A stretch of 38,030 nucleotides of DNA. It comes from Octopus sinensis. Its lineage: Eukaryota. The notes beneath the pieces were generated by a model that was not told the DNA's origin, ran no database searches, and saw only the letters and a list, made by a program, of their open reading frames with translations. Within the stretch, counting starts at the first letter, position 1. Each line of letters starts with the position of its first letter. The stretch is taken from the NCBI RefSeq assembly GCF_006345805.1, contig NW_021835765.1, positions 1 through 38,030 of the forward strand, read 5' to 3'. This document shows positions 3,190 to 27,399 of the stretch, piece after piece. The position numbers and the translations under genes are program-made.

Positions 3190-3590
3190 TCAATTTATTC
3201 CCGTTCTTAAACCCACAAAGAGCAACAACACATGAATTCTGGGAATATACACTCGGAGTGACCTTAAAGAATGAAATGAGAGTTTGGCTGTGCTTTTCAA
3301 CAAAATGAATTTCCCGCTTTCATGGATAATAAAGACTTGAGGAGTGAGAATGAGGACTTTGACTGGCTCCCCGAACCACGTAGTGACCTCATAGGGGAGG
3401 TCGGGTGGGAGAAGGAGAGAGAGCAAGAAAAGGGTTGTATCCACAACATGTTTGTATATTATTCCAGCAGTTCCACCACTCCTAACTCATTCCTTTATAA
3501 GCCAGGGAATGCACGTGCCATTTCAATGTCTTTGATGTAGTACAGTCTGGTAGGCAATTAGGGGGGTCACCAAATATGCAAATCTTGGAT
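3190..3590 (-). pseudogene. PRMT5: PRMT5 (protein arginine methyltransferase 5) TIM-barrel fragment, frameshifted
   Basis: Reads WWNCWNNIQTCCGYNPFLA /frameshift in CT tract/ LLLPPDLPYEVTTWFGEPVKVLILTPQVFIIHESGKFILLKSTAKL. This aligns by eye with PRMT5 WxWWHNFRTLCDY..ALEIGADLP....[29 protein letters not shown]. The methyltransferase domain is absent. Confidence 0.65.
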
Positions 3591-5961: not shown

Positions 5962-6875
5962 CACCCCTCGACATTAAAATCCGGACAGTTAATAAGTCGT
6001 CATTTTTATTATCAATTTTATTAAATTAAAAACTTGTTTGCAGAAAAAAACTCCTTTTTTGCTTTCGAATATGACATGGAGCATTGTCTTGTTGGAATAT
6101 GAAGATGTTTAGTCCCATTTTAATGGCTGATTTTTTCAGATTGTTAGCAAGAATGTTTATTTATTGTCCTGAGTTTATTTTTTCATCAATGAAACATAAC
6201 GAACCCATTCCAAAATATGAAAAGCATCCCCAGACCATAATTTTGCCGCCACCACACTTAACAGTTGGGTGATAATTTGAATTTTTGAATTCATTTCCCC
6301 TTTTTCGGTATATTATTTGTCTTTATGGTGCATAATAAACTTCAAAAGTACACTCGTATGAAAAAATTACTGATCTCCATCCTTCATCATATATACCAAC
6401 GAATATTTTCGATATTTCATATTTTTTGAGTATGTTTTTTTACTTAATAACGGTTTTTTCTTTGCTACTCTTCCAAATAAAACATTCTTATTTAAATTGC
6501 GAGTAATTGTTCGCGGGGAAATTACTTTTTGAGTGATGGTTTCCATTTCTAGAGCGAGGTCTTTAGCAGATTTTTCACTATTGGCTTCAGAAAGTTCCAC
6601 TAACATTTTGATTTTGTTTGTATTGAGTAATGTTGGTCGTCCAGACCCACTTTTTCTATAAATGGTTCCTGAGTTTATGTATTTTCGAATAACATCGAAA
6701 ACGGTCGATTTCGGAACTCCGAGGATATCAGAAATTCTCCTATAAGAAAAATTTTGCTGGTAATAAAAAATAATTTGTCCTTTACAAAAAGAATCCATTA
6801 ATTTTTTCTAAAATATTTAAAAAAATTAGCTCTTTTAACTATAATAGCAAAAGTATCCGGAATTTTACGCCACTG
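5962..6875 (-). mobile_element. Tc1-family transposon, deleted and frameshifted
   Basis: ORF 6798-6367 carries the Tc1 HTH and GRP motif (KSGSGRPTLL). Downstream it reads HPTVKCGGGKIMVWGCFSYFGMG...FQQDNAPCH and is truncated before the catalytic E. Imperfect terminal repeats share aaaat(t)ccgga; TA is present at 5960-5961. Confidence 0.85.
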
Positions 6876-7240
6876 AAAACAGTTTAAAGTAATTAATCAA
6901 CTAAGAATGTCCTTGTTTGGTCAATAAATGTGTAATGTTTTGTCATACGCATTTATGCACTGGATTCCGTTCTCTATGTCCTCTTAAGCCCAAATCTAGT
7001 TCTGAGAGAGTAGATAACTGACATGGACAATTCGTAGGATTCTCGTCTATTTATTGACCACAAATAATATCAGTCAACATTGCCAGTCGATGTAACAGAA
7101 CAGACTGTGCTTGGTCGATTAGGTACCCAATTTTAATGGGATGTACGAGTTGTAGAACCTTTCTCTTTTAATATAATTATAAGAATATATTTATATATAT
7201 ATTTGTTAGGTGGGTGGTAATAAATAAAATTGAGGTTTGA

Positions 7241-9137
7241 ATGGATGATGTGGACCTGGATGATTTGTCGAAACCTCTGTTGAACACTTCGAATAGTGGG
7301 ACCTTCTCGACTACGGAAAGGGACTGGTTGGTAAGCTCAGTGTACGACTACTACCGAAAGAAAGGAATATGGTGCATAATAGTGGACGAACTATTCAATA
7401 TAATGTATTAAAGACTAAATGAATATAGACGAATTGTGTTTTTGTGTGTGTTTGTAATGTACGTATATAAATGTGTGGACTTTGATTGGTGGAATATAAA
7501 AGAAGGGAACAAATCAGACATATTCCTACCAGTGGAGTCATGTCTAAGAGTGTGTAATAGAGGAGAAATGTGTATAGTGGTGGGAGTGGGAATATTCAGT
7601 GTTGTCAAAATATGTATTCTATTATGGAGACTGCCCCATTTGTGGAATATGAGGAGATTATTGAAGGATATGTCTATAAATTCAGTGAGTGAGTGGATGT
7701 GATGGTAGAATGAACTGTACGTGACTGCATGGGATAGGATTGAGAGAGGACTAATAGACAAGGATAGTGGCCTAGATGAATTACGTAAGAATGTAAGTAT
7801 AATGTAAGTTTGCCACAGCATGATTGTCCGACACACCAATTTTATGGTAGGACTAATAAGAGAATTCGAATCTATTCCTTGCTTTACAAAATTGATGGAA
7901 TTGTATTTGTTTAAGCTCTTATTTCCGTCGTGTGTGCAGGGGACTGTATTCTCAACAAGGGTGAGTATAGCAGAGATATACCGAGTGGGGGGTCTGAGGG
8001 AATATGCGGAGAGAACGTACCCTTCTCTAATATGGTAGAATTAGAACACGGTTGGTGGTGATGTGCTTGTTTGGCTTAGTTTTATCCCCATTCTTGTTTG
8101 TTGTCCAACTGTTGTATGTGTGCTTCGAATATGCTGAGGTATGTCTGTCTGATTAGTTTAGATGATTCGTAGGGCTCCTTCCAGTATATTTCGACACCGC
8201 TGGACTCCTATTGCTTACTATTCCCTTCGAAACTACTCTGAATTGGATCATGAATTGGAGGAAAGACTTGCTTTGGCCTATCCTTTCGCTAATCAGTATA
8301 TTCAATGTTTTTCTTCTCCATTGGTGGGTGTGTTGGCAAGACATGCTACTTATTTTGCGGGGGCTGTCCTTCTTTTGTTTGCTGTACTTACATTCCTTCA
8401 CGACACTATTCTTCAAGTTCCCAGAATTGTGACTGCTATTGCCATCACTAGTCTGTTTTTGTTTATTTACATTCCAGCTGCCGTTTATGCCTTTGCTAGT
8501 AGTCGACAGGTTGTTTTCTCTCTCCTTATCTTAGTCTACCACTACTAATCCACACCACATTATCCCCCATCTGGTAGCACATTTATATCATTTCTCCCCC
8601 GACCAAAAACAACCACTCCTCACTTATCGACATTTTACACTCCTTTTTCAATCACATTTAGTTGTACTTATTCAACACTTACAGATTTATTTGATACAAC
8701 AAGTGGCTGCACCGTTTACTGCTCCCTTATTTCTTTTCTTCTTTTTTCGACATAAAATACCACGACTTGTACATTTTGTTTGTCAACATACTCTCCGTAC
8801 ACACGCAGGTGGAGATATGCTGGACTATGCCCTTCTTCATGTCCCCCCTGACCACACCACTCTCCATGATAAACTCGAAATATCACTTCTTGCATTTTCG
8901 GTGCTTTTATTCTTACATTTCAGAGAAACAATCCAAGTTGGACTCCCCCTTCACAAACTCGAACATTTATACAACAACATGCTCGTGACAGTTTGCCTTC
9001 TTTTTCTATTTTTAGTGCAAGCCTACTTACAGTCTACTGAGCCCTCTTCACTTCCCTTACATACTGACTTGGATGGGGTTAACCACGAGTTTCTAACGAG
9101 TATTATATATTCCCGCATGAGGAGAGACGCCCAATAA
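7241..9137 (+). CDS. ATG9: Autophagy-related protein 9, intact, 10 exons, 560 aa
   Basis: Nine GT-AG introns: 7405-7428, 7685-7708, 7785-7808, 8017-8038, 8139-8161, 8510-8534, 8661-8684, 8901-8923, 8991-9015 (22-25 nt). Removing them gives 1683 nt open from ATG to TAA. ATG9 motifs include VYDYYRKKGIWCII, HSMIVRHTNFMVGL, SPFLFVVQLLY, RNYSELDHELEERLALAYPFANQYIQCFSSP, FQSHL-IYLIQQVAAPFTAPLFL and KLEISLLAFSRNNPSWTPP. Confidence 0.92.
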
Positions 9138-20325: not shown

Positions 20326-21550
20326 TGTGCTAATTTATAAATAAAGTTTAGTTATTTTGAGATAATATTCAAGCTGATATTGTATAAGATAGGAAAGCGG
20401 AGCTTATATCTTTAAGAAGCTTGTATGGGTCCATTCTTAGCGATTTCAACTGCAAAAGTAACGCTAATTTAGACTATATATCCCGTTTTGAAAAACCTTG
20501 AAATTTGCACTATTTTTATAGGTTTTTTTTAATCTCTTTGTCGATTACAATTGAATTTAAAATTGTTTGTCAACATGAGTCAACATAGTATTTGATGAGG
20601 TTTGTTGTCTGAGTTGATAGTATTTACAGCTGTTTGGAGATCCTCACACCAGGTTGCAAGGAGTATGTACAATAATAAGTTTTTTAAAATTAATATTTTT
20701 TTTGAGGCAACTACACTATTGACCCGTCTTGTCTCGACATTTTATCGCGTCGTATTTTATTAAGGCACGCTACTTACGACTTAGACTAAACACAGAATTC
20801 ACTCGCACTAAAAAAATGTAACCTAGCTTAGTCTTCTGAATACTTTTTGTCAAGTCCCTGACTTTTTCCGTCCTTTTTATACGGGGTTTCCCTCTCTAAT
20901 ATTTGCAGAATGTTTCTGTAGCGGATATTAGTCATGAAGGACATTTCGGGAATTTCCGACCCCATAAATAATATATTAGTACTATGGACAATAAAAGTCA
21001 ATTAATTATTTATCTTAGTTAATTGTTTATATAATGAATAATTTTATAAAATAAATAAAAAAACATTTAAATTCGTGAGTAAGTATGTAGTATGTTGTGG
21101 GTAATCATCTGTAGACGTACAGATACAAAGGAATCATTTGATTTATGCTGCTGACATATTTGTGGACATTGAGAGCCAAGAATGAAAAATATGTTTGAGG
21201 AGAGATTTTCTTGATTGTAAATAATAATGCGTAATATGTGACATGGGCAACGCGTTACGCATGGGCAACCGGTTACATTTTTTGACCTTGTAGATGTCAA
21301 AATTAAATCCTTTGATTATCACAAATAATATTTTTATGGGCCAATTATAAAGTTTAACAATGCCTTGTATGGATTTAAATTGGTTTTTGTTCATGTACTT
21401 AAATAATTTTAAAAAGTTATTTTTTTTAATGTTGGTAAACCTAAACTTATTGGAAAATTTTTAGCGTGCTAGATTTGTCTCTTGTAATCTAATAATAAAA
21501 TGATATGGTGTCTGTCTGTCTGTGTGTGCACACCAACTTCAAATTGGCAA

Positions 21551-24500
21551 TACGATGTCCTCGACTTACATGATGAGGTCCTTAAAACCTTCCCCCAAAA
21601 AAAATTAAAAAAAATTTTCTGCATTTTGGTTAAAATGAACAACTACAATGTCCTCGACTTACATGATGAAGTCCTTAAAACCTTCCCCCCAAAAAAAAAT
21701 TAAAAAAAAGTTTTCTGCATTTTGGTTAAAATGAACAACTACAATGTCCTCGACTTACATGATGAAGTCCTTAAAACCTTCCCCCAAAAAAAATTAAAAA
21801 AAAAAAAAGTTTTCTGCATTTTGGTTAAAACGAACAACTACAATGTCTTCGACTTACATGATGAAGTCCTTAAAACCTTCCCCCCAAAAAAAATTAAAAA
21901 AAATTTTCTGCATTTTGGTTAAAATGAACAACTACAATGTCCTCGACTTACATGATGAAGTCCTTAAAACCTTCCCCCAAAAAAAAATTAAAAAAAAAGT
22001 TTTCTGCATTTTGGTTAAAACGAACAACTACAATGTCTTCGACTTACATGATGATGAAGTCCTTAAAACCTTCCCCCAAAAAAAATTAAAAAAAAAGTTT
22101 TCTGCATTGGGGTTAAAACGAACAACTACAATGTCTTCGACTTACATGATGAAGTCCTTAAAACCTTCCCCCCAAAAAAAAATTAAAAAAAAAGTTTTCT
22201 GCATTTTGGTTAAAACGAACAACTACAATGTCTTCGACTTACATGATGAAGTCCTTAAAACCTTCCCCCCAAAAAAAATTAAAAAAAAAGTTTTCTGCAT
22301 TTTGGTTAAAACGAACAACTACAATGTCTTCGACTTACATGATGAAGTCCTTAAAACCTTCCCCCCAAAAAAAATTAAAAAAAATTTTCTGCATTTTGGT
22401 TAAAATGAAAACTACAATGTCTTCGACTTACATGATGAAGTCCTCCTTAAAACCTTCCCCCCAAAAAAAAATTAAAAAAAATTTTCTGCATTTTGGTTAA
22501 AATGAACAACTACAATGTCCTCGACTTACATGATGAAGTCCTTAAAACCTTCCCCCCAAAAAAAAAAATTAAAAAAAAAGTTTTCTGCATTTTGGTTAAA
22601 ACGAACAACTACAATGTCTTCGACTTACATGATGAAGTCCTTAAAACCTTCCCCCCAAAAAAAAATTAAAAAAAAAGTTTTCTGCATTTTGGTTAAAACG
22701 AACAACTACAATGTCTTCGACTTACATGATGAAGTCCTTAAAACCTTCCCCCCAAAAAAAAATTAAAAAAAAAGTTTTCTGCATTTTGGTTAAAACGAAC
22801 AACTACAATGTCTTCGACTTACATGATGAAGTCCTTAAAACCTTCCCCCCAAAAAAAATTAAAAAAAATTTTCTGCATTTTGGTTAAAATGAACAACTAC
22901 AATGTCTTCGACTTACATGATGAAGTCCTTAAAACCTTCCCCCCCAAAAAAAATTAAAAAAAATTTTCTGCATTTTGGTTAAAATGAACAACTACAATGT
23001 CCTCGACTTACATGATGAAGTCCTTAAAACCTTCCCCCCAAAAAAAAATTAAAAAAAAAGTTTTCTGCATTTTGGTTAAAACGAACAACTACAATGTCTT
23101 CGACTTACATGATGAAGTCCTTAAAACCTTCCCCCCAAAAAAAATTTAAAAAAATTTTCTGCATTTTGGTTAAAATGAACAACTACAATGTCCTCGACTT
23201 ACATGATGAAGTCCTTGAAACCTTCCCCCCAAAAAAAAATTAAAAAAAAAGTTTTCTGCATTTTGGTTAAAATGAACAACTACAATGTCTTCGACTTACA
23301 TGATGAAGTCCTTAAAACCTTCCCCCCCAAAAAAAATTAAAAAAAATTTTCTGCATTTTGGTTAAAATGAACAACTACAATGTCCTCGACTTACATGATG
23401 AAGTCCTTAAAACCTTCCCCCCAAAAAAAAGTTAAAAAAAATTTTCTGCATTTTGGTTAAAATGAACAACTACAATGTTCGACTTACATGATGAAGTCCT
23501 TAAAACCTTCCCCCCAAAAAAAATTAAAAAAAATTTTCTGCATTTTGGTTAAAATGAACAACTACAATGTCCTCGACTTACATGATGAAGTCCTTAAAAC
23601 CTTCCCCCCAAAAAAAAATTTAAAAAAATTTTCTGCATTTTGGTTAAAATGAACAACTACAATGTCTTCGACTTACATGATGAAGTCCTTAAAACCTTCC
23701 CCCCCCCAAAAAAAATTAAAAAAAATTTTCTGCATTTTGGTTAAAATGAACAACTACAATGTCCTCGACTTACATGATGAAGTCCTTAAAACCTTCCCCC
23801 CAAAAAAAAGTTAAAAAAAATTCTGCATTTTGGTTAAAATGAACAACTACAATGTTCTCGACTTACATGATGAAGTCCTTAAAACCTTCCCCCCAAAAAA
23901 AATTAAAAAAAATTTTCTGCATTTTGGTTAAAATGAACAACTACAATGTCCTCGACTTACATGATGAAGTCCTTAAAACCTTCCCCCCAAAAAAAATAAA
24001 AAAAATTTTCTGCATTTTGGTTAAAATGAACAACTACAATGTCCTCGACTTACATGATGAAGTCCTTAAAACCTTCCCCCCAAAAAAAAGTTAAAAAAAA
24101 TTTTCTGCATTTTGGTTAAAATGAACAACTACAATGTTCTCGACTTACATGATGAAGTCCTTAAAACCTTCCCCCCAAAAAAAATTAAAAAAAATTTTCT
24201 GCATTTTGGTTAAAATGAACAACTACAATGTCCTCGACTTACATGATGAAGTCCTTAAAACCTTCCCCCCAAAAAAAAATTAAAAAAAAAGTTTTCTGCA
24301 TTTTGGTTAAAATGAACAACTACAATGTCCTCGACTTACATGATGAAGTCCTTAAAACCTTCCCCCCAAAAAAAATTAAAAAAAAAGTTTTCTGCATTTT
24401 GGTTAAAACGAACAACTACAATGTCTTCGACTTACATGATGAAGTCCTTAAAACCTTCCCCCCAAAAAAAAATTAAAAAAAAAGTTTTCTGCATTTTGGT

Positions 24501-24940
24501 TAAATTGAACAACTACAATGTCCTCGACTTACATGATGAAGTCCTTAAAACCTTCCCCCCAAAAAAAAATTAAAAAAAAAGTTTTCTGCATTTTGGTTAA
24601 AATGAACAACTACAATGTCCTCGACTTACATGATGAAGTCCTTAAAACCTTCCCCCCAAAAAAAATTAAAAAAAAAGTTTTCTGCATTTTGGTTAAAATG
24701 AACAACTACAATGTCCTCGACTTACATGATGAAGTCCTTAAAACCTTCCCCCCAAAAAAAATTAAAAAAAAATTTTCTGCATTTTGGATAAAATGAACAA
24801 CTACGATGTCCTCGACTTACATGATGAGGTCCTTAAAACCTTCCCGCCAAAAAATCAAAAAATTATTTTCTGCATTTGATTAAAATGAACAACGTTAATG
24901 TCCTCGACATTCATGATGAGGTCCATTAAAACCTTCGAGG
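21551..24940. repeat. tandem array of ~93-99 bp units, about 36 copies
   Basis: Consensus approximately AACTACAATGTCCTCGACTTACATGATGAAGTCCTTAAAACCTTCCCCCCAAAAAAAATTAAAAAAAATTTTCTGCATTTTGGTTAAAATGAAC. Length variation is almost all in C and A homopolymers. Units were counted by hand. Confidence 0.97.
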
Positions 24941-27120: not shown

Positions 27121-27399
27121 ATCATTTTTATTTAATAGATAAAATATGCTAAAGGAGAGATATGGACGGTACCAATGGCAAGACTAAAAAAATGATTAAT
27201 TTTTTTTGTTAAAATGCATTATTCTTTGAAGTTATTCAATGATTAATAATTGACATCTACAAGGTCAAAAAATGTAACCGTTGCCCATGCGTAACGCGTT
27301 GCCCATGTCACATAATATATACCATAATCACGTACTCACATCAATGCAAATTTCAAATACATTTTATTGGCTTCCTCACTTGTCCTTTTGATTGATCTC

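What the first reader, a model, noticed from the sequence alone, without database searches (positions are those of the whole stretch)
7241..9137. Strand GC skew reverses at the midpoint of the intact ATG9 gene
The sense strand is strongly G>C in the 5' half (hand counts: 7561-7620 G19/C3; 7681-7740 G22/C5) and strongly C>G in the 3' half (8581-8640 C21/G2; 8821-8880 C23/G7). It is near balance at 8161-8220 (G12/C16); the gene midpoint is about 8189. Introns follow the same pattern (intron 2 gtgagtgagtggatgtgatggtag; intron 6 gttgttttctctctccttatcttag), so protein selection alone is not the cause. The protein is also shifted: V/G/W/M/C-rich first half, H/P/T/L-rich second half. Each strand is C-poor in its own 5' half. 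That is the pattern expected if replication forks repeatedly converge mid-gene, as on a gene-sized circle or a linear molecule copied from both ends, with ssDNA cytosine deamination. Convergent sense/antisense transcription is an alternative. Dicyemids, a candidate source, are reported to have chromatin elimination and extrachromosomal circles, but that link is inference.
Basis: partly seen in the sequence, partly recalled or inferred. Interest (0 to 1): 0.78.

Follow-up and report, generated by a model that had tools for sequence, protein, structure and literature searches.

The report
Strand composition flips mid-way through ATG9
An intact autophagy gene (ATG9), probably from a dicyemid parasite, is purine-rich and nearly C-free in its first half and pyrimidine-rich and nearly G-free in its second; the bias also holds at silent sites and in introns and has reshaped the protein, but its cause is unresolved and is not the cytosine deamination first proposed.

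Summary
GC skew on the sense strand goes from +0.52 (7501-7800) to -0.46 (8401-8700). This is the largest flip in the 38-kb window (z about 4.2). The best break point lies at 8066-8230; the gene centre is 8189.

I rebuilt the gene as 9 exons and 8 introns of 22-25 nt. It encodes 568 aa and matches Pfam ATG9 end to end (2.7e-64).

Four-fold sites and introns flip too, and GC skew and AT skew flip in the same direction. So this is a purine-to-pyrimidine switch. C falls to about 10% of neutral sites in each strand's own 5' half, while T is not enriched. That contradicts C-to-T deamination.

Fifty-one ATG9 orthologues show no such halves (z about 8). An axonemal dynein gene in the same window sits near parity.

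The skewed domain starts at a TATA-like element and ends near the stop codon. No palindrome, RNA structure, recognisable antisense gene or telomere repeat explains it.

The likeliest cause is germline transcription-linked, transversion-type mutation pressure whose polarity reverses along the gene (confidence about 0.4). A gene-sized replicon is not excluded but has no support. Genome-wide generality could not be tested.

The parts
7241..9137 (+). Intact ATG9 coding region: 9 exons, 568 aa, ATG to TAA
   Evidence: Exon model from a minimal-intron search refined by homology. Pfam PF04109 ATG9 2.7e-64, profile 12-477 of 478, one stretch. Human ATG9A structure 7jlo 6e-31.
7186..7200 (+). TATA-like run (TATATATATATAT) about 40-55 nt upstream of the ATG. 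The C-free stretch and the rise of the cumulative G-C walk start here.
   Evidence: Sequence read directly. The cumulative walk rises from about 7100-7200, and bin 7200-7299 has G29/C9. Promoter function is inferred, not shown.
7200..8065 (+). Regime 1: sense strand purine-rich and C-poor (G fraction of G+C about 0.68-0.70)
   Evidence: Four-fold sites in 7241-7749: G22/C3. Introns 2 and 3 contain no C.
8066..8230 (+). Switch zone. Best break points: 8066 (purine/pyrimidine), 8176 (G/C step), 8231 (sigmoid midpoint, width about 115 nt). Cumulative G-C maximum at 8174; gene midpoint 8189.
   Evidence: ATG9 homology runs straight through this zone (exon 5, intron 5, exon 6), so it is not an assembly joint or an inversion.
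8231..9100 (+). Regime 2: sense strand pyrimidine-rich and G-poor (G fraction of G+C about 0.32-0.35)
   Evidence: Four-fold sites in 8400-8899: G6/C19/T31/A20. Introns 6-8 have one internal G each.
7405..7428 (+). Intron 1 (24 nt, GTATTA..ATAG)
7685..7708 (+). Intron 2 (24 nt, G12 C0)
7785..7808 (+). Intron 3 (24 nt, G6 C0)
   Evidence: Placed by homology to human ATG9A
8017..8038 (+). Intron 4 (22 nt; a 28-nt alternative ending at 8044 is also in frame)
8139..8161 (+). Intron 5 (23 nt)
8510..8534 (+). Intron 6 (25 nt, T14 C6 G3; a 52-nt alternative from 8483 is also in frame)
8901..8923 (+).
   Evidence: Removing introns 7 and 8 together restores ...LLAFS/RNNPSWTPP..., matching the ATG9 consensus. 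The Pfam score rises from 155.9 to 218.3 bits.
8991..9015 (+). Intron 8 (25 nt, T16 C4 G3)

Best explanation
The ATG9 locus has been under a long-lasting, strand-asymmetric mutation pressure confined to its transcription unit. The polarity of that pressure reverses near the gene centre.

On each strand, the 5' half has lost pyrimidines, above all C, and gained purines. The net exchange is of the transversion type (C:G to G:C and C:G to A:T, with some T to G). It is not C-to-T deamination. The pressure is strong enough to drag the amino-acid composition of a conserved membrane protein.

The most likely source is germline transcription. One chemistry shown experimentally in yeast fits the signs. 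Pyrimidines (C, or U in place of T) are excised from the unpaired non-template strand. The abasic sites left behind are bypassed by Rev1/Pol zeta, which insert C, so that strand acquires C>G and T>G changes.

The sign change along the gene could arise in two ways. Different phases of sense transcription might carry different mutational regimes, as proposed for fungi. Or antisense transcription might enter from the 3' end.

What is shown: the composition, its presence at neutral sites, its mirror symmetry, its limits, and its absence from orthologues and from the neighbouring gene. What is inferred: that it is mutational, that it is linked to transcription, and the lesion chemistry.
For: 1. Neutral sites carry the signal, so it acts on nucleotides. 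Four-fold R/Y p = 4e-9; intron interiors p = 5e-8.

2. The domain matches the transcription unit. The cumulative G-C walk starts to rise at about 7100-7200, next to a TATA-like run. It peaks at 8174 and has returned by about 9100. The 900-nt flanks have GC skew -0.03 and -0.15.

3. The halves are mirror images. The 3-mer correlation between the 5' half and the reverse complement of the 3' half is 0.60, against 0.10 with the 3' half itself.

4. C is the depleted base on each strand's 5' half. It is about 0.10 of four-fold sites, against 0.23 in the dynein control. The gain is in G and A, not T.

5. At columns conserved in 51 orthologues the net change is G +14, C -10, T -3 in the 5' half and G -17, C +15 in the 3' half. 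G>C, A>C, T>G and C>G are prominent and C>T is rare.

6. The pattern is lineage-specific. Orthologues show no N/C difference; z = 8.1 for implied GC skew and 5.2 for purine skew.

7. The axonemal dynein gene in the same window is near parity at four-fold sites (G64 C58 A74 T55). In animals, transcription-linked skews are reported only for genes expressed in germ cells (background of PMC3315797). A housekeeping autophagy gene fits that better than a ciliary motor gene; this contrast is inference.

8. Precedents exist. Opposite GC skews at gene 5' and 3' ends, affecting four-fold sites and amino-acid usage, are known in unicellular fungi (PMC3315797). Transcription-dependent C>G and T>G on the unpaired non-transcribed strand via abasic sites and Rev1 is shown in yeast (PMC6063437).
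Against: - Only one gene was available, so generality and any link to expression are untested.
- A step fits better than a ramp. Two plateaus of similar size meeting at the exact centre come more naturally from replication geometry than from transcription.
- With convergent transcription, the antisense transcript would have to stop mid-gene and outweigh sense transcription by about the right amount.
- Polarity is opposite to the fungal case, and there the AT skew is flat.
- The chemistry cannot be fixed from one sequence. Loss of purines (G>T, G>C) on the complementary strand, with divergent geometry, fits equally well.
- No transcript data were available.
- Selection on the nucleic acid itself is not excluded.
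Confidence: 0.4

Rival explanations
1. Gene-sized replicon. ATG9 is, or long was, carried on a roughly 2-kb circle or linear mini-chromosome. Its forks start at the ends or junction and meet in the middle, so each strand is the exposed template in one half.
For: This geometry explains four features at once: two plateaus of similar size and opposite sign, a fairly sharp switch, a switch at the midpoint (8066-8230 vs 8189), and limits at the gene ends. Mirror-symmetric purine skew at both ends of gene-sized chromosomes is known in ciliates (PMC2633312). Dicyemids are reported to eliminate chromatin and make small circles (PMC6543705).
Against: The gene sits inside a continuous 38-kb sequence with transposon remnants and a satellite. 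No telomere repeats and no meaningful direct or inverted repeats lie at its borders. Documented dicyemid circles are mostly under 1.6 kb, and their only protein domains are mitochondrial. Changes made on somatic molecules are not inherited, so the replicon would have to exist in the germ line and feed back into the chromosomal copy. The ciliate skew covers only about 70-130 nt of non-coding ends and does not enter the coding region.
Confidence: 0.1
2. Chromosomal replication landmark: a fixed fork-convergence zone, or an origin, lies at the centre of ATG9. The skew is an ordinary replication-linked asymmetry.
For: The sign change is step-like, as at bacterial origins and termini.
Against: Replication skews extend to the next origin or terminus. 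Here the skew stops at the gene ends. The dynein gene 0.6-10 kb to the right, which is old sequence on the same strand, is near parity at four-fold sites. Amplitudes of +/-0.5 are far above known nuclear replication skews (my own knowledge). In the usual deamination-type replication skew the GC and AT skews have opposite signs; here they have the same sign.
Confidence: 0.05
3. Selection on the nucleic acid. The G-rich/C-poor 5' half and C-rich/G-poor 3' half are themselves functional, for example by controlling R-loops, polymerase flow, mRNA 5'-3' pairing or splicing fidelity of ultra-short introns.
For: The limits and the centre coincide with gene landmarks. McLean and Tirosh proposed an adaptive reading for the fungal skews. 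The composition gradient raises predicted pairing between the two halves, 198 pairs against 87 +/- 29 in full shuffles.
Against: The spliced CDS is no more stable than block-shuffled controls that keep local composition (-424.5 vs -422 +/- 11 kcal/mol, z = -0.19). It is slightly less stable than fully shuffled sequence (-440.6). No long complementary arms exist. Avoiding cryptic GT..AG pairs could explain a G-poor half but not a G-rich one. Introns take on the composition of their surroundings rather than contrasting with it. No orthologue shares the pattern.
Confidence: 0.12
4. Cytosine deamination of exposed single strands (C to T), by whatever process exposes them.
For: C is the depleted base on each strand's 5' half. 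In the 3' half, inferred G>A changes are moderately frequent, 10.5 of 88.
Against: T is not enriched where C is lost: four-fold T is 0.17 in the 5' half against 0.22 in the control. The AT skew has the wrong sign in both halves. C>T is 2.3 of 71 inferred changes in the 5' half. GC content is not lowered (0.39-0.41 against about 0.40 in dynein exons). CpG depletion is the same in both halves, 0.64-0.66.
Confidence: 0.04

Closest known systems
[quoted passage not shown]
   Same: The skew changes sign within a gene. It affects four-fold sites and shifts amino-acid usage between the two ends. It is tied to the transcription unit and is attributed to transcription-phase-specific mutation or to an adaptive cause.
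   Different: Polarity is opposite: fungi are C-biased at the 5' end and G-biased at the 3' end. AT skew is flat in fungi but flips here. The fungal effect is a modest genome-wide average with intermediate values mid-gene. Here a single gene shows about +/-0.5 with a step-like switch. Generality in this genome is unknown, and the one control gene lacks it.
Mirror-symmetric subtelomeric purine skew of ciliate gene-sized macronuclear chromosomes (Nyctotherus, Sterkiella; PMC2633312)
   Same: Each strand is purine-rich near its own 5' end, so the coding strand goes from purine-rich to pyrimidine-rich. It occurs on a one-gene unit, and those genomes also have tiny introns.
   Different: The ciliate skew is limited to about 70-130 nt of non-coding leader and trailer next to telomeres and does not extend into the coding region. 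Here it fills the whole CDS, about 950 nt per side, with no telomeres, inside a 38-kb chromosomal context.
Replication-linked skew switches (bacterial origin/terminus; linear genomes copied from both ends, such as adenovirus)
   Same: Two plateaus of opposite sign with a switch point. For end-primed linear genomes the switch lies near the middle (the adenovirus case is my own recollection, not retrieved here).
   Different: The classical signature pairs G>C with T>A (keto excess). Here G>C goes with A>T at neutral sites. Scale is 2 kb rather than a whole replicon. The flanks are unskewed.
Transcription-associated mutagenesis through abasic sites on the non-transcribed strand (yeast; PMC6063437)
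   Same: It predicts pyrimidine-to-G changes (C>G, T>G) on the unpaired strand. This is the class that fits the signs of both skews and the inferred replacements.
   Different: It was shown with reporters in repair-deficient yeast, not as an evolutionary footprint. Nothing in that system predicts a polarity reversal at mid-gene.
R-loop-associated GC skew at human CpG-island promoters and terminators (Ginno et al. 2013, PMC3787257)
   Same: Positive GC skew downstream of the start of transcription, as in the 5' half.
   Different: Going by that paper's abstract and my recollection of the paper, the 3'-end skew that promotes termination is also G-rich on the sense strand. Here the 3' half is C-rich. 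No CpG island is present (CpG o/e 0.64-0.66).

Membership tests
ATG9 (autophagy lipid scramblase, Pfam PF04109) | Full-length match to the ATG9 core profile above the curated cut-off | tested here: met
   218.3 bits against a cut-off of 27, E = 2.7e-64, profile positions 12-477 of 478 in one stretch. Human ATG9A/ATG9B and a third chain deposited simply as Autophagy-related protein 9 (7d0i), 6e-31 to 6e-16.
ATG9 (autophagy lipid scramblase, Pfam PF04109) | Intact reading frame with start, stop and canonical splice sites | tested here: met
   ATG at 7241, TAA at 9135-9137, eight GT..AG introns of 22-25 nt, no in-frame stops. Expression and function not tested.
Fungal-type opposite 5'/3' intragenic GC skew | Sign change of GC skew between the gene's 5' and 3' parts, visible at four-fold sites and in amino-acid usage | tested here: met
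Fungal-type opposite 5'/3' intragenic GC skew | Polarity: coding strand C-biased at the 5' end, G-biased at the 3' end | tested here: not met
   Opposite polarity here: G-biased 5', C-biased 3'
Fungal-type opposite 5'/3' intragenic GC skew | AT skew flat along the gene | tested here: not met
   Four-fold A/T is 35/17 in the 5' half and 32/62 in the 3' half, p = 1e-4
Fungal-type opposite 5'/3' intragenic GC skew | A genome-wide property of many genes | not testable with these tools
   No other DNA of the source organism could be retrieved. The only control gene in the window does not show it.
Ciliate nanochromosome subtelomeric purine skew | Each strand purine-rich at its own 5' end (mirror symmetry) | tested here: met
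Ciliate nanochromosome subtelomeric purine skew | Confined to about 70-130 nt of non-coding ends next to telomeres, not entering the coding region | tested here: not met
   The skew fills the CDS. No telomere-type repeats in 6.5-9.8 kb.
Replication origin/terminus-type skew | GC and AT skews of opposite sign on a strand (G>C with T>A), as from deamination | tested here: not met
   Same sign at four-fold sites and in introns
Replication origin/terminus-type skew | Skew domain extends over the whole replicon arm | tested here: not met
   Flanks and the neighbouring dynein gene are near parity. This would be met only if the replicon is the gene itself, which could not be tested.
Extrachromosomal circle or gene-sized linear molecule | Junction reads, capped ends or a depth step at the borders | not testable with these tools
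   No reads available. Sequence shows no telomere repeats and only short, chance-level flanking repeats.

The most novel reading that the evidence does not exclude
ATG9 in this animal is maintained in the germ line on, or is repeatedly copied through, a gene-sized replicon. The mirror-symmetric purine/pyrimidine switch is that replicon's footprint.

More generally, dicyemid genes may be subject to an undescribed gene-scale mutational regime that reverses polarity at the gene centre and is strong enough to rewrite protein composition.
Probability: 0.12. Interest if true: 0.9.

Novelty: new variant of a known kind. Interest (0 to 1): 0.62.

Why it matters
A nuclear animal gene with neutral-site C (or G) driven down to about 10% on half of its length is very unusual. 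By my recollection, asymmetry of that size is otherwise seen in mitochondrial or single-stranded genomes. Here it has visibly pulled the sequence of a conserved membrane protein: E/D/K/N are replaced by Q/H/T in one half, and A/Q/H/F by V/G/C in the other.

If it proves general in this genome, it would be a second, opposite-polarity and much stronger case of the intragenic skew reversal known from fungi. It would also offer a clean natural system for asking which step of transcription or replication produces transversion-type strand bias.

If it is specific to a few genes, it could mark unusual replicons in an animal already reported to eliminate chromatin.

For annotation and phylogenetics, it warns that parts of dicyemid proteins may be compositionally distorted in opposite directions within one gene.

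Tried and rejected
- Inverted duplication or palindrome as a trivial cause: none found; the longest inverted arms are 24 nt or less at 71-87%.
- Assembly joint or inversion at the centre: rejected, because ATG9 homology is continuous across 8.0-8.5 kb.
- Protein selection: rejected by four-fold sites and introns.
- A family-wide ATG9 property: rejected with 51 orthologues.
- Selected mRNA structure or 5'-3' pairing: no excess stability over composition-matched shuffles.
- Overlapping antisense protein gene: no Pfam match in antisense ORFs.
- CpG or methylation decay on one strand: CpG o/e is equal in both halves.
- Telomere repeats at the borders: none.
- Avoidance of cryptic splice sites: it cannot explain the G-rich half (reasoning only).
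- A second intact gene as a replicate: the PRMT5-like region at 3.1-4.7 kb is degenerate.

Retrieving more of the source genome failed. The word-indexed protein search gave nothing for the draft ATG9 or for the neighbouring transposase ORF. The exhaustive HMMER scan found no relative above about 44% identity. The first minimal-intron model, with introns up to 60 nt, was too coarse and was replaced.
Full report
**1. The observation**

In 300-nt windows the sense-strand GC skew is near zero up to about 7050. It is +0.43 to +0.52 over 7201-7800, falls through zero around 8100-8400, and is -0.45 to -0.46 over 8401-8850. It returns towards zero by about 9150.

A sliding contrast (left minus right, 600 or 900 nt a side) puts the largest flip of the whole 38-kb window at 8171. 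Delta GC skew is 0.65-0.68, z about 4.2. The only comparable value is the edge of a satellite array. Fisher tests between the halves give p = 8e-19 for G versus C and 1e-14 for purines versus pyrimidines.

**2. The gene**

A minimal-intron search gave an open frame from ATG 7241 to TAA 9137. Comparison with human ATG9A showed that short introns fit better. Two further introns (8901-8923 and 8991-9015) restore a conserved ...LLAFS/RNNPSWTPP... segment.

The final model has 9 exons, 8 GT..AG introns of 22-25 nt, and 568 aa. It matches Pfam ATG9 over profile positions 12-477 of 478 in one stretch (218 bits, E = 2.7e-64).

Homology runs straight across the switch zone. The flip is therefore not an assembly joint, an inversion or a palindrome.

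**3. What kind of asymmetry it is**

The flip is present at every codon position. At four-fold sites the 5' half has G36 C11 A35 T17 and the 3' half has G13 C30 A32 T62. In intron interiors the 5' introns have G22 C8 A32 T35 and the 3' introns G3 C14 A5 T39. The corresponding tests are p = 4e-9 and 5e-8 for purine versus pyrimidine.

GC skew and AT skew therefore flip in the same direction at neutral sites. It is a purine-to-pyrimidine switch. The two halves are mirror images in k-mer content: the 3-mer correlation of the 5' half with the reverse complement of the 3' half is 0.60, against 0.10 with the 3' half as written.

The dynein gene of the same window gives a baseline at four-fold sites of G64 C58 A74 T55. 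Against it, both halves are abnormal. On each strand's own 5' half, C drops from 0.23 to about 0.10. The gain goes to G and A, and T is not enriched.

**4. Limits and shape**

The cumulative G-C walk begins to rise at about 7100-7200, beside a TATA-like run at 7186-7200. The 41 nt before the ATG contain no C. The walk peaks at 8174 and has fallen back by about 9100. The 900-nt flanks have GC skew -0.03 and -0.15.

A two-plateau step (break at 8176 for G/C and 8066 for R/Y) fits better than a linear logit ramp. AIC is 973.7 against 986.3 for G/C, and 2552.9 against 2575.2 for R/Y. A sigmoid gives a width of about 115 nt. The gene midpoint is 8189.

**5. The pattern is lineage-specific and has reshaped the protein**

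An exhaustive HMMER scan of 1.84 billion representatives with the exon-6 ORF found 478 ATG9 relatives. None exceeded about 44% identity.

I aligned 51 orthologues that cover the core. I scored each residue by the G-minus-C content its codons imply. The N-half minus C-half difference is -0.009 +/- 0.065 in the orthologues (range -0.15 to 0.12). In the window protein it is +0.52 (z = 8.1). For implied purine content the values are 0.013 +/- 0.096 against 0.51 (z = 5.2).

In the window protein, V/G/W/M/C number 71 in the N half and 27 in the C half. H/P/T/L number 55 and 104.

At columns conserved in the orthologues but changed here, the minimal nucleotide changes are as follows:
- 5' half: net G +14, C -10, T -3.
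- 3' half: net G -17, C +15, A +6.5.
- G>C, A>C, T>G, C>G and C>A are prominent.
- C>T accounts for only 2.3 of 71 changes in the 5' half.

**6. Alternatives tested and set aside**

- RNA structure. The spliced CDS folds to -424.5 kcal/mol, against -422 +/- 11 for block shuffles that keep local composition (z = -0.19). Full shuffles give -440.6. The composition raises predicted pairing between halves but adds no stability.
- Antisense protein-coding gene. No Pfam match in antisense ORFs.
- Strand-specific CpG decay. CpG o/e is 0.64-0.66 in both halves.
- Telomere or junction features at the borders. None beyond short chance-level repeats.
- Second gene as a replicate. The PRMT5-like region is degenerate.

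**7. Source organism**

Introns of 22-25 nt occur among animals only in Dicyema japonicum and myxobolid myxozoans (PMC13644364). The neighbouring gene is an axonemal inner-arm dynein heavy chain (DNAH1-type, 7e-157; Pfam domains). Myxozoans lack cilia (my own knowledge), so a dicyemid is the likelier source. Window GC is 33.6%. D. japonicum is reported at 36.7% GC with 49% repeats (PMC6736024).

**8. Mechanism**

It predicts T gain where C is lost. Instead the AT skew has the opposite sign in both halves, T is not enriched, C>T is rare and GC content is not lowered.

A chromosomal fork-convergence zone or origin is also unlikely. The skew stops at the gene ends, and the dynein gene just downstream is near parity.

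What remains is a process bound to the transcription unit or to a gene-sized molecule. I favour germline transcription-linked mutation, for four reasons:
- The domain starts at the likely promoter.
- In animals such skews are reported only for germline-expressed genes (background of PMC3315797). That would explain why a ciliary motor gene lacks the skew; this contrast is inference.
- Fungi show that a single transcription unit can carry opposite skews at its two ends, with effects on four-fold sites and amino acids.
- In yeast, excision of C or U from the unpaired non-transcribed strand, followed by Rev1/Pol zeta bypass, gives C>G and T>G on that strand (PMC6063437). This is the class that matches both skews.

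The reversal could come from phase-specific regimes of sense transcription, or from antisense transcription entering at the 3' end.

There are weak points. A step at the exact centre with similar amplitudes on both sides is what replication geometry gives most naturally. The polarity and the AT behaviour differ from the fungal case. The mirror model, purine loss on the complementary strand with divergent geometry, fits the composition equally well.

The gene-sized-replicon reading therefore stays open at low probability. Against it:
- The gene lies in a continuous chromosomal context.
- It has no terminal features.
- Circular contigs in a dicyemid assembly carried only mitochondrial protein domains (PMC6543705).
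- Somatic changes are not inherited.

**9. Comparison with what is known, and novelty**

The closest known phenomena are:
- the fungal 5'/3' GC-skew reversal, which has opposite polarity, flat AT skew and is a modest genome-wide effect;
- the mirror purine skew at the ends of ciliate gene-sized chromosomes, which covers about 70-130 nt of non-coding sequence only (PMC2633312).

This case differs in three ways: its amplitude (about +/-0.5), its purine/pyrimidine nature across a whole coding region, and its step-like central switch. I rate it a new variant of a known kind.

Whether it is general in this genome is the key unknown. No other DNA of the source could be obtained.

Noticed in passing
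window 21551-24936: A 97-bp satellite with about 35 copies at 94% identity. It has its own constant strand bias (GC skew about -0.35, AT skew about +0.17) and produces spurious long ORFs.
   Followed up: partly
window 21232-21330 and 27220-27317: Inverted repeats of about 50-60 nt (80-86% complementary), built from an 18-nt unit (CATGGGCAACCCGTTACG). They bracket a roughly 6-kb unit holding the satellite and a Pif1/Helitron-like helicase fragment at about 25.9-26.4 kb (the helicase was identified by eye from ORF text, not searched). Possibly one composite mobile element.
   Followed up: partly
window 9.7-13.7 kb and 15.6-19.15 kb (+): The 3' part of an axonemal DNAH1-type dynein heavy chain. 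Pfam AAA_7 matches in 9.7-13.7 kb; AAA_8, AAA_9, Dynein_heavy, AAA_lid_11 and Dynein_C match in 15.6-19.15 kb. It is interrupted by inserted sequence at about 13.9-15.5 kb.
   Followed up: partly
window about 12.3-13.0 kb versus 18.0-18.4 kb: A segment of the dynein gene is duplicated. The peptide MLEDFYSDRVLEEKYTFSKTGVFFQLHPLTDHRVRLLILVARGI occurs twice. The two copies differ in which one keeps the downstream frame, so the gene may be rearranged or partly a pseudogene.
   Followed up: no
window 6367-6798 (-), about 440 nt upstream of ATG9: A 143-aa ORF that resembles the N-terminal helix-turn-helix part of a Tc1/mariner transposase (judged by eye). It had no hit in the word-indexed protein search. 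ATG9 is thus an isolated intact gene between transposon remnants.
   Followed up: partly
window 11.05-11.36, 29.7-29.96, 31.7-32.9 and 35.9-36.6 kb: GC-rich islands (0.47-0.55). The first two share a motif (ETSWLFQRISVAVLRGN / ESSWLRQRISVTIMRGNAQAIRS). They look like fragments of one retrotransposon family, but were not searched.
   Followed up: no
window 33.9-35.9 kb (+): ORFs that resemble a pogo/Tigger-type transposase (ASRGWLEKFKRRHG; NVYNADETGLFYKALP), judged by eye. GC skew changes from about -0.24 to +0.27 across 33.5-34.3 kb, the opposite direction to ATG9.
   Followed up: no
window 3193-3486 (-): A weak PRMT5 TIM-barrel match (E = 2.7e-5, below the Pfam cut-off) in a region with two moderate skew flips (3461 and 4071). 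No intact gene could be assembled, so it is probably a decayed fragment.
   Followed up: partly
window 7408-7839 (-): A 143-aa antisense ORF runs across the C-poor 5' half of ATG9. It is expected by chance, because a G-poor strand has few stop codons, and it has no Pfam match. This is a trap for automatic gene callers.
   Followed up: yes
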